Shown one piece after another: positions 16,199 through 64,000 of a stretch of 64,000 nt of DNA (within the stretch, counting starts at the first letter, position 1; each line of letters opens with the position of its first letter). Location: the NCBI GenBank assembly GCA_025201805.1, contig MU619299.1:5604-69603 (forward strand). Direction: 5' to 3'. Source of the stretch: Parasitella parasitica NRRL 2501. Taxonomy: Eukaryota > Fungi > Mucoromycota. The position numbers were made by a program, and so were the translations under genes. Under the pieces are notes generated by a model, which did not search any database, was not told the DNA's origin, and was given only the letters and a program-made list of their open reading frames with translations.

Positions 16199-17693
16199 TT
16201 GTATTTTCAAATCAAAACTTATTGGGGGGGGGGGTACCTACAAAATCTGAAAATGAATCTCACAACAAAAATGACCTTCAACAAACTTACTTGAAATGAT
16301 GTAAAGGATTAAAATAAAAAAGCATCATGCTATACATATTTCCGGGCTATTGCATATATCTTAATATACTTTGTTCTTCGCTTAGCATATATATATATAC
16401 CATTTAGTTTTTAGGAATTATAAAATCATCTCTTTATATATAATCTACCATGCCCAAAAACCTTCAACGCACTATCACACATACAACTGTGGAAACTCGA
16501 GAGAAAATCTGCTTTGACCATTTTATGGGTTTCATGCCAGTAAAAAAAAGTCTGACAAAAATATCGAATAGCTGACAAAATAGCCAGAGATATCCATGAT
16601 CAATTTCGTAAAACTGACTCTGTTGAATACCGTCCTCGAGGAGACCCACGAAATGTAAAGATTCAGCAAATCCGCTCTGAATTTTTAAGAAATATAATTG
16701 ACGAAGAAGGTGAGGGAAATATTTTGACATTAGAGCGACTGCAGCAAAGACTTATTGTCGAGTTCCCAGAAGAATTTCCTTTAAAAAATGCAATTGGGAT
16801 TGCTACAATCCAAAAGCATATAACTCTCAGAAGCTGTGCCTGACTCTCAAAAGAACATCCCCAGTGGAATAAATACAAATAACTGAAAGAATAGCAAGAG
16901 AGCGAAAAGATTACTGCATTGGTCTTTCGCTCAAGGGTATTAATTACATGACAAATTGTATTTTTGTTGATGAAAGTGGATTTAATGCTTGTATGGTACC
17001 TGGACATGCAAGATCAGCCAAAGGAAAGAAGGCCCATGTAATCAAAAAAGACGAAGAGAGGCAAGAATATTTCAATCATTGGTGCTATTTCAGCAAAACG
17101 GGTTGAATCTTTTTACAAGCTGCTATGACAGATGGTTATACAAACGGGTTTATTTTTGCTGAATTTACCAAGCAGCTGTTGGAATGGGTTGATATGGAAT
17201 ACCCACATCAAGAATTCTATTTTATTATGGATAATTTAAAATTTCACAAGAGTCCTATTAGACAGAATCTTTTTAAACACTCAAAACATAGCCGCCATTT
17301 CTTGCCGCCATATTCTCCTATGCTAAATCCTATGGAAACTAGCTTCAACGAATTGAAAAACTTTGTTAGAAGGGATCCAAAGAAAAACAAAGAGACTCTC
17401 TTGGAGCTCATTAAGGAAGTAGAGAAGAAAATAACTCCTCAAGACTGTGAAGGATGGGCCCATCATTGTGTCAATAATGTCAATAGATGTATTGCTGGAG
17501 AAGATCTCACGTTTGAAAATTAGTGTTATATTTTATTGAATAAAATGACTTTCTTTACCAAAGTTGTGATTCATAAGTACTGTCGGTTCGATAAGTAATT
17601 TTTGTGAGATTGACTAGGTCAATTTTGTGAGTTTGATTAGATCATTTTTGTAGGTACCCCCAAATATTTTGTGAGTTTGATTTGAAAATACGA
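16199..17693 (+). mobile_element. Tc1/mariner (IS630-like, DD34E) DNA transposon, degenerate
   Basis: Terminal inverted repeats T(T/C)GTATTTTCAAATCAAA..GGGGGTACCTACAAAA flanked by TA at 16197-16198 and 17694-17695. Transposase motifs FVDESGFN, FIMDNLKFHK and LPPYSPMLNPME, with 34 residues between D and E. Confidence 0.9.
16450..17523 (+). pseudogene. Frameshifted DD34E transposase
   Basis: ATG at 16450 (MPKNLQRT..), but stops and frameshifts break the N-terminal part; only 17125-17523 is open. Confidence 0.8.
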
Positions 17694-19664
17694 TACTATC
17701 TATTTTACATGTTTAGCGTTAGAGTCACAAAAAGGGACTTTTGAACTGACATTAAGCATTTTTATAAGCGATAATGGTAAAGGGCTTTTCTGTCACTCGC
17801 AATTAGTAACCTATGAATTATTTACAAATAACAAGGGGTTATTACAGCAAAGCATTGTATCCATTAATTATCCTCTTCTGCTTCCAACTCGATGAGCCAC
17901 ACCTGTTTTATCATTTTATTATGAAGAAAGGTATAATTTAAAAATATTTACTTTATAAAGCTGTAGAATTGATATTGACGTGATATCACCTCCAGAAAAA
18001 TATTTTTACAGCTTAAAAGCAAGAACTTTAGCTTCGTGAGCCATTTTTCGATTAATTTTCATAATCAAAAGTGCTCTGAAAACACGAAAAATAGTATCCA
18101 TTGGTAAAAATATATATTATATATGATTTTGGTGCGATTTGAGCATGATTTTTTTTTCGATGCAAAATGACAGATTTTTTCAATTTTTTCCTTGTATCCA
18201 CACATCTAAAATCATCAATTATGCATTATCCTCGATTTTGACCTCAAAAATGCAACTTTTTACTATATCATATATTGGAGGAAAATGATCATAAAAGGTC
18301 ATTGCTTGATCTGAAAAGACTAGAAATGCGCTTTGATTAAGCAAAATGTTGATTTTTTCCTCTTAATCTGTTTTTGAGGTTTTTCGGCAGAATTCCTTTC
18401 ATAAGCATACGGGAATTATGAAATGACACCAGCGTATAGAGCGTCCAAAAATACAGCTATTATCATAAAATGACAGCCGTGGTATGCATAGTATCGGAGG
18501 ATGATATCTTGCCTCAAAGGAGTAATTTTGGTTTCGAATTGTCCAAATGGAGTTTCTGAAAGAATCTTTTCTTCCTGATTTTGGACGCATTTAATCTCCG
18601 CTGCCAGAGAAAAATGGTGCTTTTTTGAAGAAAGCATTAGCTTTGAGAAGACATAGCTTACCCAATTAAAAAGAAAAACAATCGAAGCCTATTTTATATA
18701 AATTTTGAGCTTCTTGGCTTTCTTATGGTAGTACTTGCATGTCTGTACCTGATTTGACGATATCACGCTCCGATTTTGAAAAATACTTTTCCGAAAAAAG
18801 TCAGAGATGTGGATACCTTCATCTGATTTCAACTTAAAAAGAATAAAATCTTGCTTTAAGCTATGCAAATATGTAATCGAAAAGGTGCCTTATAGTCGAA
18901 TACATTACTTTGTATTACTTTTTTTGTGTTTGAGATTGCTAAACATTGTTTTCTTACAGTTTTTGTCTTTTTTCTGACAATAACACAGTGAAGCCCGCGT
19001 AGACCAAAAAAAAAAAAAAAAAAAATCAGACGCCTAAAATCTACGCTGGCTTTACAAAGACACACTTTTGAACCATTCTAATATTATGGAAAAGATAGCA
19101 CAGGTTTGACTAGCTGTTCTACTGTGCAACTGGATATGCTGATCCCAGCTTGGTACTTGTCTGACAAGACCTTCTACACTAGAGGACTCCAGGTAAACTG
19201 AAGGTATAAAGAAATGCCAGAGAAAAGGAAAGAGTTTGCCACCAGGATAATATACCCATTCATAAAAAATCATCTGTATAAAAATTTATAAAATTCCAAG
19301 CCCATTTAAATGAATCTTGCTGTTCGTTCCTGAATCCCTTTAAAGGTTGTAGATCCAAAGTCAACAGACATACTTACACCCAGAATCACAGTGATGTTTG
19401 TCAATAGGCAACCGTAACCTTTTTTTAAAGACTATTTTGAACTTTAAGGTAAGATGCAAATAGCTTATTTCACAACACATTCTCTTAATATTTTCAGTAC
19501 GAATGAAACAAATTAAAGCAATTACTTTTTTTCTTTAAATATGGAATCCCTACTTAAATTCATTTTAGGGAGACATTTTTCTTCTCTCAGAAACTTCGTA
19601 GCATTTATCAGAGATAAAAGTTTTTTTTTTTTTAACCAGAAACCCTAATATATATTATCACAAT
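17694..19664 (+). repeat. Diverged, left-truncated copy A of the unclassified ~2.8 kb TIR element
   Basis: Colinear similarity to 58724-60615, with many substitutions and indels but a 128 bp identical block (18240-18367 = 59239-59366). Confidence 0.9.
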
Positions 19665-34947: not shown

Positions 34948-35040
<93 letters not shown>

Positions 35041-44996: not shown

Positions 44997-45567
44997 ACCG
45001 TCAATTGGTCGTTATAAATTTCAATTGGTCAATTATTTGAAGCTCAATCGGTCACTTTACAATGCGTTTGTTTTTTTTGAGACGTAGGAAATTGATTTTT
45101 TTACATTCATTATCTTTTAAATAAGATGTAGGCTGAAGACGTCTCTACACAGTAACTTTAAAACCAGATAAAGATACGGCTCACTGTCAGACATGAACAC
45201 TCGGATCTTTAGAAGAGGGAGCTTCTGTGGACAACTAGTAGAGGGTAAAGAAACAAGACCGACAAAGGGGTCTTCAGTCTTTTGTTGTTTGTTCCCAACA
45301 GAAGAAGAAAAAATCCTTCACAGAATGAGGAAGAGCCCAGTTAAAAAAAAATATAGTAACATTCTCTTCTGAAATTTGTAATTATTCTAAATACTACGCG
45401 CACGCCAATCAATCTTTTAATTTGACGTCACTAAAATTTTTTGGCGTGTAATTTTGGCGCGCGCCTATTCTCATCCTTTTAAGTTGATCAATTGGGATTC
45501 AGAAAAGCGATCAATTGAGCTTCAAAAAATTGACCAATTGAAATTTAAAAAGCGACCAATTGACGGT
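44997..45567. mobile_element. MITE-like element with ~60 bp imperfect TIRs
   Basis: ACCGTCAATTGGTCG..AAATTTCAATTGGTCAATT.TTTGAAGCTCAAT from 44997 is the reverse complement of about 45513-45567; interior is non-coding; TA at 45569-45570. Confidence 0.78.
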
Positions 45568-48457: not shown

Positions 48458-49096
48458 TTTGTAACGTTAAAGTATAATTATATATTGGGTAAAGAGAAGT
48501 AGTTGGATGGTGGGCATAGCTTTTATGTGTAAAGCAAAAATGAGACTAGACTACAAATAATCCCCATTACTGGCTCATATTGTAAGATTCTGTGCGCAAT
48601 GGAGAGTCTGTTGTGCTTATCATTATCTATTGATATTATACCGCATAAATTTACATGAGTCAAATGCGCAAAAATTAATACAGTGGAATAAACGGGTTGA
48701 AGGTGAAAACCATATTTCATTATACCTATTGGTATTACGCACTGTCTAGAGGATCTCCTATTCTAGTTTATAACGCTGCTGGAAGGAGAATTTGTATAGA
48801 ATTCTCTTTCATTGACAACATTTTGCAATGGCCAGCACTACTTTTCATACAAGTCAATGTTATCTTTGAAGGATCTTGCGTTGAAAAGTTATATCCCAGG
48901 CGATACCATTAAGCCCTCGTGAATGTCTCTTTGTCATTAACAACCTACATAGCAACAGCGACTTTTCCTTCGAACAAGAACTGTATTATGGACTACATTA
49001 CATGTGTAAAATTTGCAACCATGTTTACTTGATTGAATGAAATAAAAGAATATGTATCATATGAACCTATGCTGTTGTAGAACCAAAGTACTTCAG

Positions 49097-49590
49097 TTCT
49101 GATCAAGAGGTACTAGCAAGAATACATTTCGAATTCAAAATCGACTTGGACAAGGCGAAAAAGATAGGCATTTCTTTAACTTCGATAAGTTTAAGAAGAA
49201 CATGTCGCTTCTACTACATGTCATGCGCTTCCAGCAGAAGGTTGTAACCCAGCGACGCTGCATACTATCTATTGCCTCACTTAGGCATTCTATAACCCCA
49301 GCAACGCTGCATATAGAACCCTTTGACTTGAAGTAGAATCAAGGTAATTCATTTCTGATCAAGAGGTACCAGCAAGAGCACATTTTGAATTCAAAATCGA
49401 GTTAGACAAGGCGACCAAAGACAGATATTTCTTTACCTTTGATAAGTTCAAGAAGAGCATGTCGCTTCTACTACATGTCATGCGCTTCCAGCAGAAGATT
49501 GTAACCCAGCGACGCTGCATACTATCTACTGCCTCACTTAGGCATCCTATAACCCCAGTAACGCTGCATATAGAACCCTTTGACTTGAAG
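49097..49590. repeat. Two-copy direct tandem repeat, ~257 bp period
   Basis: 49097-49333 and 49353-49590 align end to end with scattered substitutions and one indel. Confidence 0.92.
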
Positions 49591-49721: not shown

Positions 49722-52012
49722 ATGTCAGAGTATCGAGGAAAACAAGGTGAATCAATAGAGATACTTACATGTAGATCATAATATACTAATCAAAAGTTCA
49801 ATTTTTTTACAGCATTACATAGTTATATAAATAATAACAGAGTTCCTTATTTCAATGATTTCATCACAGAGAACAAAATGAATTTCATGCAATGGCTGGA
49901 GTACAAGCAGCAGATAGAGCCAATGACCCTTTTTGCATTGTGGCGAAGCCGATTTGCAATGGCCCTACGAGATTATAAAAAGTTGGAGATGAAAGTAGAA
50001 GGGTAAGTAGCTTAATTACTTTGATTGATGTAATAATCTGATAATGAAATGTACGATTTACCAAAAGAAAAGGCACGTATAACAAGGCATTTTGGGAGGA
50101 TATTTTAAAAGGGGCAAAGGCACTCGTAAGTTGCAAATTATTCACAACCATCAATATCTTGATATTAACCACAAAACAAAACAAACTACATTTAGTATGA
50201 TGCAAGAGTTACCTGCACGGTCAACGCAATTGGGGCCGCTGTGATGGCTACTGCTGCCGCCACTACTATGCTAGCCGAGTCCTTTACTACCACTGATAAT
50301 GAACTTGTTGCTGATTCCTCTACTTCCACTGTCGATTATACTACTACTACCGCAGGTAAAGAGAGTACAATAAGAACTGCTGCTGAAACTACCTCTCGAA
50401 GTTATGAAGCGACCAGCACTAGTACTATGACTCCCACCACTGGCGATGACACTATTGCTTCTGCACATCTTACCTGGGATAAGATACCAGCGGACGATCA
50501 TGAATCGCGCTTTCATTATTTGGCCCATAAAAAGGTAAGCGCCATATACTATTTCCATCAGAACTATGCTAGATGTTCTAATTTTTTTAAACAGTGTTCT
50601 CCAAGTGCGCTTTTAAATGAAGAAGAGAAGATGTATTTGAGTGATTACAAAAGCAATGGCTCTCCCAAGGCGGATCTATTATTTATTTGCGCATCTCTAC
50701 TTTTGAAAGAAGAACTCACGTGTGAAGAGGATGCATTGCTCGAGTAAGTAATATAAATAAAAATACGTCTTGCCCATTTTAACGATAAATGTATGCAGAT
50801 TGAGTCTTTCCGGAATTTACAACTATCTAAATCCATATATGAAGAAAGTGTACCAAGAGAAGTTGAATAGAGCACCGCCCTCCACAATAATAACTACAAC
50901 CACTGCCACCAATTCCGTTGCTGAAGTCATGACAAGCGTTCGTAATTTGCTCGACAGTGAGAAAGATATGGATGATATGCTGTATGAAGTACAGTTGGAA
51001 AAAGCCAGACTTGTCAAAGAGAAGCTGAGACACAGTGACATGTACAAGGCACTGGCAATTCTGGAGAAAGTGTAAGTAGAGCAATATACGGAAATCTTGA
51101 ATATACTATTGACAACTGCCAACTACCATTAACAGAATTGAAGACACGCAGCTTTGGAACGAAGCGGGCGACGAGCAGGAGATGACCTTCTACCGACGCT
51201 TCGCTAGCTATCTGGACACACTGCTAATTAAAACTGATCTGAATATGATCGAGTATGTGTATAGAACCAAATTTGATATTTCTCTAATCATATCCCTCTT
51301 ATTTTTCTCAGTGGAGAAACTGGCTGCTCAAGCAGCAAAATTGCAATTGAAACTAACAAACAACTGTTCCACGTCGAAGATTCGTCAGCAACGTACGCAC
51401 GCAAGAACATAGACTTATGTAGTAATGAGTGGAAGAGATCGAAGGTGACTTCAGAGTTGAAATTAAAGCAGCAGTCAAAAAATTTGCGCATAAATGCTTC
51501 CATCATGAACAGCTTGCATGCATTTGGTACCTCTCCCTCATCTCTTTTAGCAATTGATATGATAGGTGATGATATTGTGATTAACCGTAGCGGCAAATTA
51601 TTGACAAAATTATATTCTATAGGTTTACACGGCTATATCTACCTGTTGACAAAAGTGGATGACTACTTCGTTGCAACCCCCCACTCAATCCTTGTAATAC
51701 CAAGACGTTTTGCAGACATTGCATGTATTGAAAATACTCTCCTAGCTCTTTTTAAATTCAAAGTAAGTGTCTTTTTCTTTTACAAGTGCACGGCCGCGTT
51801 GAATTGACATCAAAATTTGATAGCATTTTTACACATCATTGGTTCCTGCATTAAGAAAGAGAATTGCTGCAACTGAGATTTACAGTGATATTGGAAGTGT
51901 TTGCGAGATGGATGCCGCTATCTCTGATAGTACTCATGTCAATCAAAATTTTATATTTTTTAAGTCTAAAAAAAGAAAGCATAGTGCCTCCGAGTCTGAA
52001 GAGGACAACTAG
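49722..52012 (+). CDS. Multi-exon hypothetical protein with a putative restriction-endonuclease-like C-terminus
   Basis: Exons with GT-AG boundaries link MSEYRGKQALHSY.. to ..MTFYRRFASYLD..DGE..TYARKNIDLCSNEWK..QQSKNLRIN..DMIG-LHGYIYLL..ESEEDN*. Internal junctions only partly checked. Confidence 0.6.
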
Positions 52013-52233
52013 AAACTCCCTCACATGAATATTTTCTTGTATTTTATTATTCTTTTTTTATTTTTTTCATCAATAAATTAGTACCATAGTATACCCTTTG
52101 CAGTTAATAATTATCATATAAATTTCATTCATGAATAGCTGGAATATAGTGCATTGACGTGAAATCCTGAGTTAAAGGTTGATTTGATCTATCATAGTCC
52201 AATATATCTTGTATAGTGCACATCTTATTTGAT

Positions 52234-54453
52234 GTCTTTATAAAGCCAGCGTAGACCTTGAGCGCCTGATCTTTTTTTTTTTTTTTTTTTTTTCGGTCAA
52301 GCGAACTTCAGTGTGTTATTGTTGGAAAAAAGACGAAAACTGTAAGAAAACAATTCTTTAGCGATCTCAAACAAAAACAAAAAAAATTAATTTAAAGTAC
52401 TGTATTAGACTATGTGGCACTTTTTAACTACATATTTGCATAGCTTAGACCAAGTTTTTGTACTTTTTAAGTTGATATCAGTTAAACGTAACGACTTTCT
52501 TGACTTTTTTCAGAAAAGTATTTTTCAAAATCTGAGCGTGAGATTGTCAGGCTAGGTACAGACATGCAAGTACTACCATTAAATAGCCAAGAAGCACACA
52601 ATTTAATAATCGAGGTTTCAATTGTTTTTCTTTTGAATTAGTTAAGTTATGGCTTCTCAAAGCTAATGCTTTCTTCAAAAAAAGCACCATTTTTCTTTGA
52701 TGGCGGAGATTAAACGCATCTAAAATTAGGAAGAACAAATTCTTTCAAAAACTCCATTTGGACAATTCGAAACCAAAATTACTCTTTCGAGGCAAGATAT
52801 CATCTCCCGATACTATGCATACCACGGCTGTCAGTTTATGATAATAGATGTATTTTTCGGCGCTCTACAAGATGGTATCATTTCATAATCCTCGTATGCT
52901 TAGAGAAGGAATTCTACCGAGAAAACCTCAAAAGCAAATTAAGAGGAAAAAATCAACATTTTGCTTAATCAAAGCGCATTTCTAGTCTTTTCAGATCAAG
53001 CAATGACCTTTTATGATCATTTTCCTCCAATATATGATATAGTAAAAAGTTGCATTTTTGAGGTCTAAAGTGAGGATAATGCATAATTGATGATTTTGGA
53101 TGTGTGGATACAAGGAAAAAATTGAAAAATCTGTCATTTTGCATCGAAAAATAAATCATGCTCAAATTGCACCAAAATCACATATAATATAGTTGTTTCC
53201 CAATGGATACTATTTCTGGTGTTTTCAGGGCACTTTTGATTATGAAAATCAATCAAAAAATGGCACACGAAGCTAAGGTTTTTGATTTTAAGCTGTAAAA
53301 AATATCTATCTGGAGATGATATCAAGTCAATATCAATTCTATTACATGGCAAAGTCCTATAAAGTAAGTATAGTTGATACCACAAGAATACAATTTTTTA
53401 AGATACCATAATCAAACAGATGTGGCCGATTGAGTTGTAAGCAGAAGATAATAATTAATGAATACAATGTTTTGCTGTGATGACCTCTTTTGATTTGTGA
53501 ATAATTCATAATTACCATTTTTAATTATGAGAATGCCTAATGTCAGTGATTTCAATGCTAATCATGTACAATAGAAAGTAGAGTAGAGGTTAGGATTGAG
53601 GTTGAGGGTAATTGTATTAACAAAAAGTAAAGCTTCATAATAAGCTTCTGATAAATTCCAGGTTCCAGGCACTGCACTTTCAAGTATCAAACTCTGACAA
53701 GGGGTAATTTGCTATACCAAACACATTTTTGCACACCAACCCGTCCTTGATATTGGATATGCTGACTTTACTCAACAGATGTAACATAAAATGATAATGC
53801 GAAGTTACAAAAATAGAGATTGTCATTTGCTGAATCTTCTATGATTTTTCATTGTGTAAATTCATATTTTGACAGATACGTACAAATGAATGCTTTATTA
53901 GTATATACAGTTTAATTTGATATTTTGATGGTTTTGATGGTTTTGTGGTTTTGTGGTTTTGTGGTTTTGTGGTTTTGTGGTTTTGTGGTTTTGTGGTTTT
54001 GTGGTTTTGTGGTTTTGTGGTTTTGTGGTCTAACCATTTTTTTTAGTTTAAATACCTATGCAGTTCTATAGACTTGTCTAAATATTTGGGTTTATATAGA
54101 TGTCTAATATCTAACGGAAATATCTGAAATAGTTAAATTATAGGTCGTTGGTGATTGTTCAGTTTTAGGTATCTAAAGTACATCCTGCAAAATGATTGCT
54201 TGATCAATAATTAGGGCATCGCAATTTCGCATATCATGTTGAGATTTTCCCTCTTCTTTGGTATTTTTAATCTAAAATAGAAATCCTACTTGAAATATTC
54301 TTAAAGAGACATTTCTCTCTCAGAAACTTCTCAGCTTTTATCAAAAATAAAAGGCTTGTTATCAGAAACCCTAATGTATATCATCTCAATCACCATGCCC
54401 TTTGTCATTTACTGGAATTTTTTTCCAGAAACCATAAAAAGACTGTAAATGCA
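52234..54453 (-). repeat. Copy B of the TIR element (left arm of the inverted repeat, 52234-54341, plus outer TIR segment to ~54453)
   Basis: Reverse complement of 57963-60026. Paired ORF coordinates sum to a constant 112304 (53134+59170, 52547+59757), showing colinearity without net indels. Confidence 0.95.
53941..54028 (+). repeat. (TTTTGTGG)11 telomere-like microsatellite
   Basis: 11 perfect 8-mers preceded by two TTTTGATGG variants. Confidence 0.95.
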
Positions 54454-54551
54454 TATTGCTTTGTAAGAACGTGACTAGGAAACCAGCTCTACAGTAATCC
54501 ATCAACTGCGGTTTGGTCAACATTTTCTTCTTGGTTTTTACTCAATCCAAC

Positions 54552-57518
54552 ATGAGCAATAAGAGAAGAATTGATGGTATATACGTGCACATTGAGTCAG
54601 TTGGTATAACACACACTATAGCTGTTTACATATAAATGTAGAGCTCAGTGATGACGAAGATGATGATGATGTTCAATTAGATGATACTTTACAATCAAAG
54701 CTCTTTGGTAAATAAAGAAGATGTGTCCAACATTGTTGTAGCTTTGTATAACTTGTGTAATAGTTCCAAAAAATGCCAATCTCGAAATCAATTCTTTAAA
54801 ATCAGGCAATGAAACCATTGTCGAGTCCAATAAGTCTGATTTCATTTCTCACATCTTTGGTCGTGAAGATTACACCAATCTCCCCTTAAAGCAAGACCAC
54901 GCCTCTAGACCTCTGTGGATCAGTCCTGAGGATGGGCATATTATTTTGGAAGGTTTTTCACCTATTGCGGAGCAGGCTCAAGATTTCTTGGTTGCAATTA
55001 GTGAACCTGTCAGTCGGTAATATTGCTGTTGATTAAAATTTGGGTTTAACAGCGAAGAAACTCATAGTATATTCATAGGCCTGCTCACATTCACGAGTAC
55101 AAACTGACACCCTATTCATTATATGCTGCTGTTTCCGTAGGTTTAGAGACGGAGGATATTATTGAAGTTTTGAATCGTCTTTGCAAGGTGCCTGTTCCTG
55201 ATTCCATCACCCAATTTATTCGTCAATGCACATTGTCATATGGTAAAGTTAAGTTGGTCTTGAAGCATAATCGTTATTATGTCGAATCTTCTCATCCCGA
55301 GACATTGCAAATGCTACTCAAAGATGCTGTTATCAATACGGGTCGTATTGTACGGGACGAAAATGACCAAATTATCAGTGCACCTGCTGGGTCTGCCGCG
55401 CTCTTGGTCAACTCAAAACCCACAGGAAAAGATCTGGCTATTCCTGGTGTCAAAAACCCCACGAAAACAGACGATGGCAGCGTTGAGAAGATTAAGGAAA
55501 TGACAGCCGAAGAAGATGAGCGAAAAAAAGAGGAAGAAAAGTTTTTTGGTGCAGTTGTAGGAATTGATAAAGAAGACGAAGAAGATGATTTTGGCGGGGA
55601 GCAGGTTCATTCGTTTGAAATTGCTGCAGAGCACGTAGAGGTAAATGTGTTTATTATATTTGTGATTTAGATGTAAATACTGATTTGGATGGTATCACAG
55701 AACATCAAAAAAAGATGTAATGACATTGACTATCCCATGTTGGAGGAATACGATTTCCGTAATGACACAGTCAATGCAAATCTCGAAATCGACCTCAAGC
55801 CGACAACCACGATTCGTCCATATCAAGAAAAGAGTCTCTCTAAAATGTTTGGTAATGGGTAATGTATAGCGATCGATTTGATGTATAACTGAGAATGCTC
55901 AGACATTTTGCCAATAATAGCCGTGCTCGTTCTGGAATTATCGTTCTTCCGTGCGGTGCTGGCAAAACTCTTGTTGGCATCACTGCTGCCTGTACTATTA
56001 AAAAGAGCTGTCTTGTGCTGTGTACATCTTCGTAAGCATCTCCCTACAATATAATGTCGCTTCTTGTTGCTAACCTTTCTTTGTAGTGTATCAGTCATGC
56101 AGTGGAAACAGCAATTTTTACAGTGGAGTAGTATCAAGGAAAATCAGGTTGCTGTATTTACATCTGATTGCAAAGAGAAATTTTCTGGTGCATCAGGTAT
56201 CGTAATCTCAACCTATTCGATGGTGGCAAACAAGCGTAAACGTTCGTATGATGCTCAAAAGATGATGGAGTTTTTGGAGTCTCGTGAATGGGGATTTTTA
56301 TTGTTGGATGAAGTGCACGTTGTGCCTGCAAATATGTTTCGAACTGTTGTTACAACCATTGCTGCACACGCCAAGTTGGGGCTGACAGCTACCTTGGTTC
56401 GTGAAGATGAAAAGATTGATGACCTCAACTTTTTGATCGGCCCCAAATTATATGAGGCCAATTGGATGGATTTGGCCAGTCGTGGTCATATTGCAAATGT
56501 ACAGTGTGCCGAAGTATGGTGCCCGATGACGCCCGAATTTTACAAAGAGTATTTGTATGAAAACTCTCGAAAACGTACATTATTATACGTGATGAATCCA
56601 AAGAAGTTTCAAGCCTGCCAATACCTTATTGGATACCACGAGAGACGAGGCGACAAGATTATTGTCTTTTCCGATAACGTATATGCTCTTATCGTAAGTT
56701 GTTGGACCTAATCCACAAAAGTATTAATTGACATAACCTTGTTGGTAGGAATATGCCAAAAAATTAGGAAAACCTTACATTTATGGTGGTACTGGTCAAC
56801 AGGAGCGTATGCGTATTTTGCAAAATTTTCAATACAATCCTGCCGTCAGCACAATCTTTTTGTCGAAGGTTGGCGACACAAGCATCGATTTGCCTGAAGC
56901 TACTTGCTTGATCCAAATCTCTTCTCATTATGGCTCTAGACGGCAGGAAGCCCAGCGTTTGGGCCGTATTTTGAGAGCAAAGAGACGTAACGATGAAGGG
57001 TTCAATGCTTTCTTTTATTCGCTCGTTTCACGCGATACGCAAGAAATGTATTATTCTACAAAGCGCCAGCAGTTTCTAATTGATCAAGGTTATGCTTTCA
57101 AAGTTATCACAAATCTCGAAGGCATGGACAGTGATCCCGACATTGTGTTTAGAACTCATCAAGAGCAAATGGACCTTTTGAAGGCTGTATTATTAACAAA
57201 CGATGTAAGTTGTCGGCTTAAATCAGGTTGTTCCACTTACTAAGAGAAATATAGACTGATCTAAGAGACGAAGAGTTAATTAATGTGGATGATGTTGGTA
57301 AAATTACTGACCGCAAGGTCGCTGCCAAGAACCGAGCATCAGGCCTGGTTAAAAGACAAGTTACGACAACAAAAACTCTTGCTGGTGGTGATAACATGGC
57401 CTACCTTGAATACAACCGCAATTCTGGCGGCCAATTTTCTGGTCGTGGCCGTGGCAATGGCGGCGCTCCTCCGAAGGAACATCACACGCTTTTCAAAAAA
57501 TTCATGGGAAGAAAGTAG
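54552..57518 (+). CDS. SSL2: TFIIH 3'-5' helicase XPB (Ssl2/Rad25)
   Basis: [75 protein letters not shown]. Confidence 0.97.
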
Positions 57519-57962
57519 TTTTGACCAAATTATTAAAAGCCCTTTGTAAATAACCACATGTTTTTGTTACATAAGAATGGCACATTCTAAAGCAGCAGAT
57601 TTATCATTATATTATCCTCTATTACAATCTTGGAAAAAAGAAAATATAGGCACTGTTTTATTTCACATGTCGCAGCAATTCACAACAGGAATCAGCTTTA
57701 AAAACAATGCATTGGCATCTACAAAAGTCGAATGGGTCGAAGCAGGCTGTTGGCATGAATCCTGCTTTTTCTTGACAAAAAGAAGTTCTTTTTAGTTTTT
57801 TCATATGACCAAAACGTAGAATTTAAACTATTTAGACCAGCAATATGGCCCTGATACGAAAAATAAATCCTTTGATAGTACTATAAGATCAAAAGTCCCT
57901 TTTGTGTGTGTGTGTGTTCCTTGAGGAAGGAGGGAACAACATTATAATCTATAGTCTTTTTA

Positions 57963-60677
57963 ATAAAAGCTAAGAAGTTTCTGAGAGAGAAATGTCTCTT
58001 TAAGAATATTTCAAGTAGGATTTCTATTTTAGATTAAAAATACCAAAGAAGAGGGAAAATCTCAACATGATATGCGAAATTGCGATGCCCTAATTATTGA
58101 TCAAGCAATCATTTTGCAGGATGTACTTTAGATACCTAAAACTGAACAATCACCAACGACCTATAATTTAACTATTTCAGATATTTCCGTTAGATATTAG
58201 ACATCTATATAAACCCAAATATTTAGACAAGTCTATAGAACTGCATAGGTATTTAAACTAAAAAAAATGGTTAGACCACAAAACCACAAAACCACAAAAC
58301 CACAAAACCACAAAACCACAAAACCACAAAACCACAAAACCACAAAACCACAAAACCACAAAACCATCAAAACCATCAAAATATCAAATTAAACTGTATA
58401 TACTAATAAAGCATTCATTTGTACGTATCTGTCAAAATATGAATTTACACAATGAAAAATCATAGAAGATTCAGCAAATGACAATCTCTATTTTTGTAAC
58501 TTCGCATTATCATTTTATGTTACATCTGTTGAGTAAAGTCAGCATATCCAATATCAAGGACGGGTTGGTGTGCAAAAATGTGTTTGGTATAGCAAATTAC
58601 CCCTTGTCAGAGTTTGATACTTGAAAGTGCAGTGCCTGGAACCTGGAATTTATCAGAAGCTTATTATGAAGCTTTACTTTTTGTTAATACAATTACCCTC
58701 AACCTCAATCCTAACCTCTACTCTACTTTCTATTGTACATGATTAGCATTGAAATCACTGACATTAGGCATTCTCATAATTAAAAATGGTAATTATGAAT
58801 TATTCACAAATCAAAAGAGGTCATCACAGCAAAACATTGTATTCATTAATTATTATCTTCTGCTTACAACTCAATCGGCCACATCTGTTTGATTATGGTA
58901 TCTTAAAAAATTGTATTCTTGTGGTATCAACTATACTTACTTTATAGGACTTTGCCATGTAATAGAATTGATATTGACTTGATATCATCTCCAGATAGAT
59001 ATTTTTTACAGCTTAAAATCAAAAACCTTAGCTTCGTGTGCCATTTTTTGATTGATTTTCATAATCAAAAGTGCCCTGAAAACACCAGAAATAGTATCCA
59101 TTGGGAAACAACTATATTATATGTGATTTTGGTGCAATTTGAGCATGATTTATTTTTCGATGCAAAATGACAGATTTTTCAATTTTTTCCTTGTATCCAC
59201 ACATCCAAAATCATCAATTATGCATTATCCTCACTTTAGACCTCAAAAATGCAACTTTTTACTATATCATATATTGGAGGAAAATGATCATAAAAGGTCA
59301 TTGCTTGATCTGAAAAGACTAGAAATGCGCTTTGATTAAGCAAAATGTTGATTTTTTCCTCTTAATTTGCTTTTGAGGTTTTCTCGGTAGAATTCCTTCT
59401 CTAAGCATACGAGGATTATGAAATGATACCATCTTGTAGAGCGCCGAAAAATACATCTATTATCATAAACTGACAGCCGTGGTATGCATAGTATCGGGAG
59501 ATGATATCTTGCCTCGAAAGAGTAATTTTGGTTTCGAATTGTCCAAATGGAGTTTTTGAAAGAATTTGTTCTTCCTAATTTTAGATGCGTTTAATCTCCG
59601 CCATCAAAGAAAAATGGTGCTTTTTTTGAAGAAAGCATTAGCTTTGAGAAGCCATAACTTAACTAATTCAAAAGAAAAACAATTGAAACCTCGATTATTA
59701 AATTGTGTGCTTCTTGGCTATTTAATGGTAGTACTTGCATGTCTGTACCTAGCCTGACAATCTCACGCTCAGATTTTGAAAAATACTTTTCTGAAAAAAG
59801 TCAAGAAAGTCGTTACGTTTAACTGATATCAACTTAAAAAGTACAAAAACTTGGTCTAAGCTATGCAAATATGTAGTTAAAAAGTGCCACATAGTCTAAT
59901 ACANNNNNNNNNNNNNNNNNNNNNNNNNNNNNNNNNNNNNNNNNNNNNNNNNNNNNNNNNNNNNNNNNNNNNNAAAAAAAAAAAAAAAGATCAGGCGCTC
60001 AAGGTCTACGCTGGCTTTATAAAGACGCACATTTTTGAACCATTCCAATATTATGGAAAATATGGCACAGGTTTAACTAGTTGTTCTACTGTGCAACTGG
60101 ATATAGAGAATCCGGCTTGGTACTTGTCGGATAAGATCTTCTACACTAGAAGACGCTAGATCAACTGAAAGTATAAGAAAGTGACAGAGAAAAAGAAACA
60201 ATCTGCCACACCCATTCATAAAAAATTATCTGTATAGAAATTTATGAAATTTCAAGCACATAAATGAACCTTGCTGTTCGTTCCTGAATCCTTTTAAAGG
60301 TTTTAGATCCAAAGTCAACAGATATACCGTATTTACACCCAGAGTCACAGATGTTTGTCAATAGGCAACCGTAATCTTTTTCAAAAACTACTTTGAACTT
60401 GAAGATATGATGCAGATAGCTTATTTTACAATACATTCTCTTAATATTTTCACTACGAATGAAACAAATTAAAGCAATTACTCTTTTTCTCTAAATATGG
60501 AAATCCCCACTTAAAAATCTTTTTAGGGAGACATTTTTCCTCTTTCAGAAACTTCTTAGCTTTAATCAGAAGTAAAAGGTTTGTTATCAGAAACCCTAAT
60601 GTATATCATCACAATCACCATGACCTTTATCATTTACTTGACCTTTTTTTTTAGAAACTGCAAAATGACAGTAGCAT
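57963..60677 (+). mobile_element. Copy C of the unclassified TIR-bearing non-autonomous element (right arm 57963-60026 plus unique right end)
   Basis: Right end (~60485-60677) is an imperfect inverted match to its left end and a direct match to 54265-54453. No intact transposase and no TSD found. Confidence 0.75.
58276..58363 (+). repeat. (CCACAAAA)11 microsatellite, mirror of 53941-54028
   Basis: Same unit number and same two variant units as in copy B. Confidence 0.95.
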
Positions 60678-60924
60678 TAGTATAAATCTGAGCTGTATCA
60701 TTAGCCACGTGCTTTCTCATCAAATCAAACATCAGTAACAAGCTTCGATGCAAAAAAAAACTATAACGATGATACATGCACCTACAAAGGCTGGTTTCCG
60801 ATAGATATACTTGCAAAAAACGCTACGATCAATCATAGACTTTATTTCGTTTCACAAGCAAATTCAACGCTTCGAAACAAATGGAAGAAATCGACCAAGA
60901 ACAAAATAGATGCGGCCTGATATT

Positions 60925-61437
60925 TCAGCTCGGATGCACTCGTAAGTGCCTCTTCATGTTGCTCTGGACGCTAAATTTTCGCCTGCAGCCTAAATAAGTG
61001 CAATGGAAAGGCTTTTCTCCGGTATGCGAATATACATGGATTTTTAAAGAGGAAGGCCTCGTAAACTTCTTGGTGCAAAATCTGCAGCCGTACTGTTTCC
61101 TTTTAGTAGTCTTGCTGTCTTTTTTTATAAGACTAGAACTTGGTCCTTTGTCTGTTTCATCATCTGTGGTGGAAAGCGATGAGGATACTAGCGATGATTC
61201 AGATGTTGACGAATAAAGCATCGATGACATGCCAAAGGACCTCGAAAATGGTGGAGGGAGTATGTGTGAAGAAGAAGAAGCCGAGAAATGTAGTGTGTTT
61301 GTCGCTGATTTCAGCTGCACAGGTAAGACAGCTTCCATGTAGAAAATGGACGGCTGAATTGGATCTGGCAATTTAGAAGCTGTGGTTGGAGAAATAAGAA
61401 TGGAAGCACCATGTATGTCTTTAATGCAGCAATGCAT
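60925..61437 (-). CDS. C2H2 zinc finger transcription factor (two fingers)
   Basis: YGCRFCTKKFTRPSSLKIHVYSH-TGEKP-FHCTYLGCRRKFSVQSNMKRHLRVH. Confidence 0.88.
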   Translation of the reverse strand: MHCCIKDIHGASILISPTTASKLPDPIQPSIFYMEAVLPVQLKSATNTLHFSASSSSHILPPPFSRSFGMSSMLYSSTSESSLVSSSLSTTDDETDKGPSSSLIKKDSKTTKRKQYGCRFCTKKFTRPSSLKIHVYSHTGEKPFHCTYLGCRRKFSVQSNMKRHLRVHPS

Positions 61438-61682
61438 TAGATACTATTAAATATTGTTCTGCTCATTCAAGGATATTTCACCTTTTCTTTTCTGTTCTAT
61501 GTGAATCATTGGCAAGTTTAGATTTTCACTCTGCTGATCTTGATGCATTTTTAAGAGATGAAAAAAATGCACATCATAATACTTGGATATACATATATAT
61601 ACAGAAAGAAAAAAAAAAAGTTCCGTTTATTAGCATTTGACAACTATTACATCTCGAAAAGGTTGCAACAAACACAGGTATT

Positions 61683-63338
<1,656 letters not shown>

Positions 63339-64000
63339 TCATAAACAAAAAGAAAGAGGCTTTTGAAAAACTAGAAAAAAAAAAAAAAAAGAGTTAAATA
63401 TAAAGCGCTTAATTAAATTCTTCCAAATCTCAAGGGCTACGCAAAACATTGAAGTTGAAGAGTAAAAATTAGGGATGGTCAGTATAATATTGTTTTCACC
63501 AACACAAATTTTATAAATCGATATAAAAAAAATTGCACTCTTTGATATTTGATATTTAATAACTCAATAAATGTATTGTGTCAAATCCTGTACCAGTATT
63601 ATTATTTGGTATGAATACTCAAACAAGTATCGAATGAATATAGAACTCATCCCAAATATCACAATTAATGTGATGGCTCCAAGGTCCGCGCTCTTTAGAT
63701 CCATCACAAATACCAAGGACACTGCTACCGTGGGTAAAGATAAGTCACCGTCCTTTTTTACTTTTTGGTGTCAGAAATTAAATTCAAGTTTTGAAATGTT
63801 TTTTGATTGAAAAAACTTATTAGTGAAATATCAATATAATCGTATAAGATTTGAAGTATACAAAGCTTAACATGTTTATTTTAGTAATATAGCAAAAAAA
63901 AATTAAAATTAATATCTGGTATTGCCACCATTAGCCTCAATAACAGCCTTGCATCGAGAGCTCATACTGTCGACTAAAGTCTCTAAAAATGATGGAGGTA

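What the first reader, a model, noticed from the sequence alone, without database searches (positions are those of the whole stretch)
52234..60026. TFIIH helicase gene SSL2/XPB enclosed by ~2.1 kb near-perfect inverted repeats: candidate invertible cassette
Seen: 52234-54341 is the reverse complement of 57963-60026. It is colinear up to the N gap, has the same 11-unit microsatellite, and I saw mismatches only at the inner edge. The 3.6 kb spacer holds one complete gene, XPB, with its flanks. Established: kb-scale inverted repeats mediate flip-flop inversion, for example the MAT locus of Ogataea and Komagataella, and XPB is an essential, normally single-copy gene. Inference: this is an invertible segment, a very recent inversion, or a composite/foldback element that has enclosed a core transcription and repair gene.
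Basis: partly seen in the sequence, partly recalled or inferred. Interest (0 to 1): 0.85.

Follow-up and report, generated by a model that had tools for sequence, protein, structure and literature searches.

The report
Twin transposon relics flanking XPB
In a pin mould, two dead copies of a common jumping-gene family landed on either side of an essential DNA-repair gene and recombination has kept them identical, as it does for neighbouring copies across this genome; nothing points to a purpose-built genetic switch.

Summary
The inverted repeat is real. Contigs from four independent studies enter both arms and give about twice single-copy depth, so it is no assembly artefact. The gap hides about 114 bp of colinear repeat.

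The arms are not unique DNA. They are two copies of a non-coding family (about 200 copies) with ~190-bp terminal inverted repeats ending at TA, Tc1/mariner-like, in a Parasitella genome. Each arm has its own 5' terminus, so they are two insertions.

Copies on different scaffolds are 87% identical and never above 94% (1,628 pairs). Eight of 25 same-scaffold pairs exceed 95%, identity falls with distance, and close pairs share near-identical cores with diverged ends: distance-dependent gene conversion. A second inverted pair 12 kb apart is 99.8% identical.

XPB has the same position and orientation in another Parasitella assembly that lacks the arms. It was not captured and no inversion is recorded. 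No MAT gene or silencing asymmetry is present, and a flip would leave XPB's flanks unchanged for 2 kb. Rare passive inversion remains possible and untested. The scan noted similar inverted pairs elsewhere in this genome.

The parts
52234..54445 (-). Left copy of a non-autonomous TIR family (element positions 1-2212); 3'-truncated, lacks the last ~650 bp including the right TIR
   Evidence: no remnant of the 3' part upstream by profile search
54265..54447 (-). 5' terminal inverted repeat of the left copy (~185 bp) with flanking TA at 54446-54447, about 105 bp upstream of the XPB start codon
54552..57518 (+). XPB/SSL2/RAD25 gene, 9 exons, 833 aa by exon lengths, intact; only close copy in the genome
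   Evidence: outgroup gene 833 aa
57950..57962 (+). Right copy's own 5' terminus (TA plus 11 bases, one change from the family terminus), followed by a ~93-bp deletion between two T5 runs
   Evidence: the 13-mer occurs with at most 1 mismatch only twice in the window, here and at 54447; chance of the match outside the T run about 5e-4
57952..60671 (+). Right copy of the same family, near full length, TA on both sides
57963..60026 (+). Homogenised overlap: inverted near-identical match to 52234-54341
58275..58381 (+). 8-bp microsatellite expansion shared by the two arms (also 53923-54029); at most 2 units in 56 other copies
59904..59973 (.). Assembly gap beside a poly-A run; counterpart in the left arm is 114 bp (52287-52400)
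60484..60673 (+). 3' terminal inverted repeat of the right copy (82% to the 5' TIR) with flanking TA at 60672-60673
17812..19664 (+). Third, diverged copy of the family in the window (85-89% to the arms, 34-41 kb away): internal control
60925..63323 (-). C2H2 zinc-finger gene and ESA1 (MYST acetyltransferase): right-hand synteny anchors

Best explanation
Two copies of a high-copy, non-coding TIR element of Tc1/mariner type inserted at TA sites on either side of XPB, in opposite orientation, after this lineage split from the other sequenced Parasitella. The left copy later lost its 3' end and the right copy lost ~93 bp of its 5' TIR. Only 3.6 kb apart, they recombine ectopically, and repeated gene conversion has erased all differences in the 2.1 kb they share, except one site next to the deletion junction. 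Shown: family membership, two termini, ancestral XPB position and orientation, distance-dependent and patchy identity among other copies. Inferred: conversion as the mechanism in this pair; the order of truncations; that a crossover would now and then invert the XPB segment, without an obvious effect because the flanks are the same for 2 kb.
For: Family of about 180-260 candidate places, best other copy 89%. TA-flanked TIR ends shared by many copies. The right arm has its own terminus. Core identity: different scaffolds median 87.0%, maximum 93.9%, 0 of 1,628 pairs above 95%; same scaffold 8 of 25 pairs above 95% (on 6 scaffolds), Spearman rho with distance -0.63, p 8e-4; 6.6 kb 100%, 12 kb 99.8%, 22 kb 95%, 42-62 kb up to 98.6%, beyond 70 kb at most 92%. 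Close pairs are mosaics: core 98.4% against 3' end 86% (C79), 96.6% against 90% (C7), 95.7% against 79% (C64), p 4e-6 to 2e-18, while background core and 3' end do not differ. The single true arm difference is a family polymorphism 10 bp from the deletion junction. Outgroup colinear and without arms. Known rule: conversion between TE copies rises with proximity and identity (PMC6598467).
Against: In this pair the whole overlap is identical, so no mosaic is visible in it. A local hop followed by two truncations gives a similar picture, and shared private indels and the microsatellite fit both. Same-scaffold pairs are not independent (C79 gives three). Some pairs at 27-45 kb are not homogenised (86-92%), including the third window copy. 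No transposase for the family was found. Only 58 of about 200 copies were analysed.
Confidence: 0.78

Rival explanations
1. Recent local duplication: one copy hopped or was copied by template switching to the other side of XPB, and there has been no time to diverge.
For: Zero differences in about 1,980 bp (95% upper bound 0.15%); private microsatellite and indels shared; no mosaic inside this pair.
Against: No other near-identical full copy exists, so the family is not recently active. Both copies would have had to lose different ends, with changes clustered in the first 25 bp and none elsewhere. Other close pairs show conversion mosaics.
Confidence: 0.11
2. A staggered-break inversion cut one element and duplicated its inner 2.1 kb at both breakpoints; the element is whole only in the flipped state (also proposed in scan note s1-715799).
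For: The intact 5' TIR lies inside the spacer and the 3' TIR outside the right arm. Mucor species have XPB in the opposite orientation to the upstream genes.
Against: The right copy has its own TA terminus. The Parasitella outgroup has XPB in the window's orientation with no arms, and it split before the family spread (27% four-fold divergence against 13-15%).
Confidence: 0.04
3. Programmed, MAT-like flip-flop cassette that regulates XPB or its neighbours.
For: Arm length, identity and spacing resemble the 2-kb repeats of yeast flip-flop loci (PMC6692504).
Against: One housekeeping gene inside, no alternative genes; ordinary genes on both sides; XPB flanks identical for 2 kb in both states; arms are a ~200-copy relic family and absent in the outgroup; an equally identical inverted pair occurs on another scaffold.
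Confidence: 0.02
4. Composite or foldback transposon that has enclosed and can move XPB.
For: Inverted transposon copies around a gene; similar layouts were noted elsewhere in this genome (scan note s1-694314, not re-tested).
Against: The left outer end has no TIR; XPB is at its ancestral locus and has one close copy; arms carry no transposase.
Confidence: 0.02
5. Assembly artefact: one arm duplicated or two diverged arms collapsed.
For: Short-read assembly; a gap in the right arm; microsatellite length cannot be trusted in short reads.
Against: Contigs of four studies enter both arms from the spacer and the left arm from upstream, and arm contigs have about twice single-copy depth.
Confidence: 0.03

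Closest known systems
Saccharomyces chromosome XIV FF (flip/flop) region (Salzberg et al. 2022, PMC9731477)
   Same: Kilobase inverted repeats kept identical by concerted evolution around ordinary genes; inversion, where it occurs, is a passive by-product. There the orientation was stable over about 53,800 mitoses and 950 meioses.
   Different: There the arms are 4-kb sporulation genes conserved for 17 Myr and both orientations are shown. Here the arms are young, lineage-specific transposon relics, the spacer is 3.6 kb with one gene, and no second orientation is shown.
Non-allelic gene conversion between neighbouring TE copies (Alu; Aleshin and Zhi 2010, as reviewed in PMC6598467)
   Same: Homogenisation rises with proximity and identity; gene trees depart from insertion history.
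   Different: For Alu the elevation is reported within 10 kb. Here pairs 40-60 kb apart reach 96-98.6% and pairs within 12 kb about 100%, in a mucoralean fungus; searches of the held papers found no such report.
Non-autonomous Tc1/mariner derivatives; Mucoraceae Tc1-MP1 (PMC9977792)
   Same: Long TIRs (141-169 bp in those fungal Tc1 elements, ~190 bp here) flanked by TA.
   Different: No transposase; 2.9-3.1 kb non-coding body; TIRs only 82% alike; partner element not identified.
MAT flip-flop loci of Ogataea, Komagataella, Pachysolen, Ascoidea (PMC6692504)
   Same: About 2-kb near-identical inverted arms around an invertible segment.
   Different: No MAT genes, no expression-versus-repression asymmetry, no induction shown.
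Candida albicans long inverted repeats and CEN4 inversion (PMC6591007)
   Same: Long repeats around a ~3-kb spacer can invert it.
   Different: There the spacer is a centromere core; here it is a protein-coding gene.

Membership tests
MAT-type programmed flip-flop cassette | Near-identical kb-scale inverted repeat | tested here: met
MAT-type programmed flip-flop cassette | Alternative genes (MAT idiomorphs) at the ends of the invertible segment | tested here: not met
   only XPB in the spacer
MAT-type programmed flip-flop cassette | Repressing element (centromere, telomere) beside one arm | tested here: not met
   ordinary genes and open frames on both sides, site lies mid-scaffold; chromatin itself not testable
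MAT-type programmed flip-flop cassette | Both orientations in a clone, inducible | not testable with these tools
   only short-read contigs served; both orientations give the same junctions
Homogenised-repeat inversion polymorphism (Saccharomyces FF type) | Arms evolve in concert | tested here: inconclusive
   shown for the family within one genome; no diverged isolates to show it for this pair
Homogenised-repeat inversion polymorphism (Saccharomyces FF type) | Both orientations among strains | not testable with these tools
   window orientation equals outgroup orientation; no long reads
Non-autonomous Tc1/mariner element | Terminal inverted repeats | tested here: met
   ~190 bp, 82% alike, in many copies
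Non-autonomous Tc1/mariner element | TA at both ends | tested here: met
   TA at the three surviving ends in the window and in most clearly aligned ends of other copies; no empty site available to prove duplication
Non-autonomous Tc1/mariner element | Dispersed multi-copy, no coding capacity | tested here: met
Non-autonomous Tc1/mariner element | Autonomous partner with the same TIRs and a DD34E transposase | not tested
Composite / foldback transposon carrying XPB | Functional ends at both outer borders | tested here: not met
   left outer end has no TIR or remnant
Composite / foldback transposon carrying XPB | Cargo moved or amplified | tested here: not met
   syntenic with ESA1 in five relatives; one close copy
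Mucor mosaic centromere or inverted-repeat centromere | Gene-free AT-rich core in a 15-75 kb ORF-free region (10.1101/706580) | tested here: not met
   spacer is a gene, neighbours are genes, arms have ~200 copies; the 41-bp motif itself was not available to test

The most novel reading that the evidence does not exclude
This mould has unusually strong, long-range (up to about 60 kb) ectopic conversion between transposon relics, so any close inverted pair becomes a self-homogenising repeat and the enclosed gene, here the essential XPB, a recurrent inversion polymorphism of the Saccharomyces FF type. Conversion seems centred on a core that holds a short motif shared with repeats of Mucor species, which might be a recombination hotspot.
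Probability: 0.25. Interest if true: 0.5.

Novelty: new member of a known kind. Interest (0 to 1): 0.3.

Why it matters
The XPB arrangement itself is an ordinary product of transposon insertion and gene conversion, and probably neutral. The side result is more useful. One repeat family gives a distance curve for ectopic gene conversion in a mucoralean genome, a group for which the searched literature held no such report. It warns that near-identical inverted pairs in this genome are not evidence of recent transposition, composite elements or switches, and that dating transposon copies by identity will mislead here. The 3.6-kb spacer is small enough for a cheap PCR or long-read test of passive inversion.

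Tried and rejected
Staggered-break inversion was my first reading; I dropped it after finding the right copy's own terminus and the colinear outgroup. A strain-specific A>G at 53440 looked like a difference between arms, but the contig over that site has double depth with A, so the variant probably comes from another family copy. The 1-nt indel at 52356 is ambiguous for the same reason. Rfam gave only a sub-threshold U7 hit. No Pfam hit for arm ORFs and no long ORF shared among 58 copies. A profile search found no remnant of the left copy's 3' end and no family copy at the outgroup locus. The bacterial promoter scan was at chance level and is not suited to a fungus. The exact ESA1 protein was not on record elsewhere. 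Mycotypha and Gilbertella have no XPB within 10 kb of ESA1, so they do not polarise the older rearrangement. Paper searches for Parasitella inversions and Mucorales transposon conversion gave no hits.
Full report
Observation. A self-comparison of the window gives 52401-54347 against 59903-57957 at 99.9% over 1,947 bp without gaps, and 52234-52286 against 60026-59974 at 100%. The only mismatches are 54332/57972 and 54342/57962. Both arms have 11 perfect microsatellite units. The spacer holds XPB: nine exons from 54552 to 57518, all introns GT-AG, each exon open in its phase, 2,502 nt in all, 833 codons plus stop, with Pfam ERCC3_RAD25_C and Helicase_C_3 hits. A genome search with the largest exon finds this gene and one distant paralogue at 40%.

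The gap. The 70 N at 59904-59973 face 114 bp of the left arm. The third window copy and many other family copies have both sides of the gap in order about 100 bp apart. The sides are therefore continuous and the gap is drawn too short. It lies beside a poly-A run and no gene crosses it.

Not an artefact. Six runs of five studies hold 88-91% of the stretch's words; one may be the source, and they may be one clone. I laid four runs of four studies on 52060-58050. In each, one contig spans the spacer and enters both arms (54302 or 54325 to 58002). An upstream contig enters the left arm and stops about 30 bp inside it. Arm contigs have mostly 1.5-2.5 times single-copy depth. These are short-read contigs, so they cannot give the orientation of the spacer.

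Organism. ESA1 (61683-63323) is 92% identical to a Parasitella parasitica protein and 81-87% to Mucor proteins. DNA identity to assembly GCA_000938895.1 is about 85% in genes and four-fold sites differ by 27%. It is a Parasitella of a lineage distinct from that assembly.

What the arms are. They belong to a dispersed family: searches give 180-260 candidate places, and the best other copy is 89% identical. Full copies are about 2.9-3.1 kb, with ~190-bp terminal inverted repeats about 82% alike, mostly flanked by TA. No long ORF is shared and no Pfam family hits the arm ORFs. Long TA-flanked TIRs are known from Mucoraceae Tc1 elements (PMC9977792). I class it as a non-autonomous Tc1/mariner-type relic; the partner transposase was not identified.

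Two insertions, not one split element. The left copy runs from an intact 5' TIR (TA at 54446-54447, about 105 bp upstream of the XPB ATG) to an abrupt end at 52234, with no remnant of its 3' part. The right copy ends in a 3' TIR (TA at 60672-60673). At first this looked like one element cut by a staggered inversion. But the right arm begins with its own terminus at 57950-57962, one change from the family 13-mer, followed by a ~93-bp deletion between two T5 runs. That 13-mer occurs only twice in 64 kb, at the two 5' ends, and the chance of the match outside the T run is about 5e-4. This also accounts for the mismatch at 57962. The one remaining difference, 10 bp from the junction, is a site where both letters occur in the family.

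Synteny. In GCA_000938895.1 the order XPB(+), C2H2(-), ESA1(-) and an upstream anchor are colinear with the window, without arms or any family remnant. Family copies differ by 13-15%, less than the 27% between the two lineages at four-fold sites, so the insertions probably postdate the split (inference; conversion lowers family divergence somewhat). XPB is at its ancestral place and in the older orientation. Four Mucor species have XPB head-to-head with ESA1, an older rearrangement unrelated to these arms.

Why they are identical. Among 58 copies, the 940-bp core is 87.0% identical at the median between scaffolds, at most 93.9%, and none of 1,628 pairs exceeds 95%. On the same scaffold 8 of 25 pairs do, on six scaffolds, and identity falls with distance (rho -0.63, p 8e-4): 100% at 6.6 kb (this pair), 99.8% at 12 kb (an inverted pair on C79), 95% at 22 kb, up to 98.6% at 42-62 kb, at most 92% beyond 70 kb; direct and inverted pairs both take part. 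Local hopping alone would make whole copies alike. Instead close pairs are mosaics: core 98.4% and 3' end 86% (C79), 96.6% and 90% (C7), 95.7% and 79% (C64), while background core and 3' end do not differ. Copies of different structural forms also share homogenised cores, as on C3 and C47. This is the signature of non-allelic gene conversion, known to rise with proximity and identity (PMC6598467). Caveats: the pairs are not independent, the sample is about a quarter of the family, and several pairs at 27-45 kb are not homogenised.

How it most likely works. Shown: two TA-flanked termini, family membership, ancestral XPB context, distance-dependent and patchy identity in the family. Inferred: repeated intrachromosomal conversion erased the differences between these two arms. 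From general knowledge of recombination, a fraction of such events between inverted repeats resolves as a crossover and inverts the spacer. That would be passive and probably silent, since XPB keeps the same 2 kb of sequence on both sides. The Saccharomyces FF region is the model: homogenised arms, recurrent inversion over evolutionary time, stable in the laboratory (PMC9731477). I put the chance that both orientations exist among isolates at about one in four to one in three (judgement, untested).

Comparison. It works like the FF region and like neighbouring Alu conversion. It is not a member of the MAT flip-flop class, which needs alternative genes and a repressing site beside one arm (PMC6692504); neither is present. 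It is not a composite element, since the left outer end lacks a TIR and XPB has not moved. It is not a centromere of the Mucor type, which lies in long gene-free regions (10.1101/706580).

Earlier scan notes. One reader proposed the staggered inversion for this stretch; I tested it and it is disfavoured. Others noted near-identical inverted transposon pairs around genes elsewhere in this genome. I did not re-test those, but the conversion curve offers a plainer explanation for their identity.

Verdict. A real structure with an ordinary cause: a new instance of conversion-homogenised transposon repeats. Interest 0.3, mostly for the genome-wide distance effect in a group where I found no report.

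Noticed in passing
window 59232-59432 (and 52872-53072); L036 4410-4652 and 20233-20390; L037 3549-3673, 8456-8519, 19493-19558; L034 4407-4458: A 45-200 bp stretch of the family core is similar (60-75%; profile E down to 5e-10) to dispersed repeats in Mucor lusitanicus, M. velutinosus and, weakly, M. ambiguus. It lies in or near the part where conversion is strongest. Function unknown.
   Followed up: partly
G000:C79:63384-64541 and 75599-76756 (L038, L039): Second inverted pair of the same family, 99.7% over 1,158 bp, arms 11 kb apart: a full copy and an internal fragment. The fragment ends at nearly the same element position (2231) as the window's left arm (2212).
   Followed up: partly
window 54454-63358 against L034-L037: In Mucor, XPB and ESA1 are head-to-head, about 200 bp apart in two species. 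In both Parasitella genomes that arrangement is broken by what look like two separate local inversions.
   Followed up: partly
G000:C15:219774-220397: A second, distant XPB-like gene (40% identity to the largest exon) in a 628-codon open frame.
   Followed up: no
window 16600-17523: Frameshifted Tc1/IS630-type transposase remnant (Pfam DDE_3, E 8e-15) directly left of the third family copy.
   Followed up: partly
window 49058-49590: Two-copy tandem repeat of about 257 bp, 89-91% identical.
   Followed up: no
window 44997-45058 and 45504-45567: Short inverted repeat, 64 bp, 89%, about 450 bp apart; possibly a small TIR element.
   Followed up: no
window 50241-51807: Intron-broken open frames without Pfam hit and without a match in the outgroup locus, directly left of the left arm; possibly transposon-associated cargo.
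   Followed up: partly
L035 19491-21014 (Mucor fragilis): Nested near-perfect inverted repeats (215 bp at 99%, 206 bp at 97%).
   Followed up: no
window 34951-35037: Pure run of 87 A.
   Followed up: no
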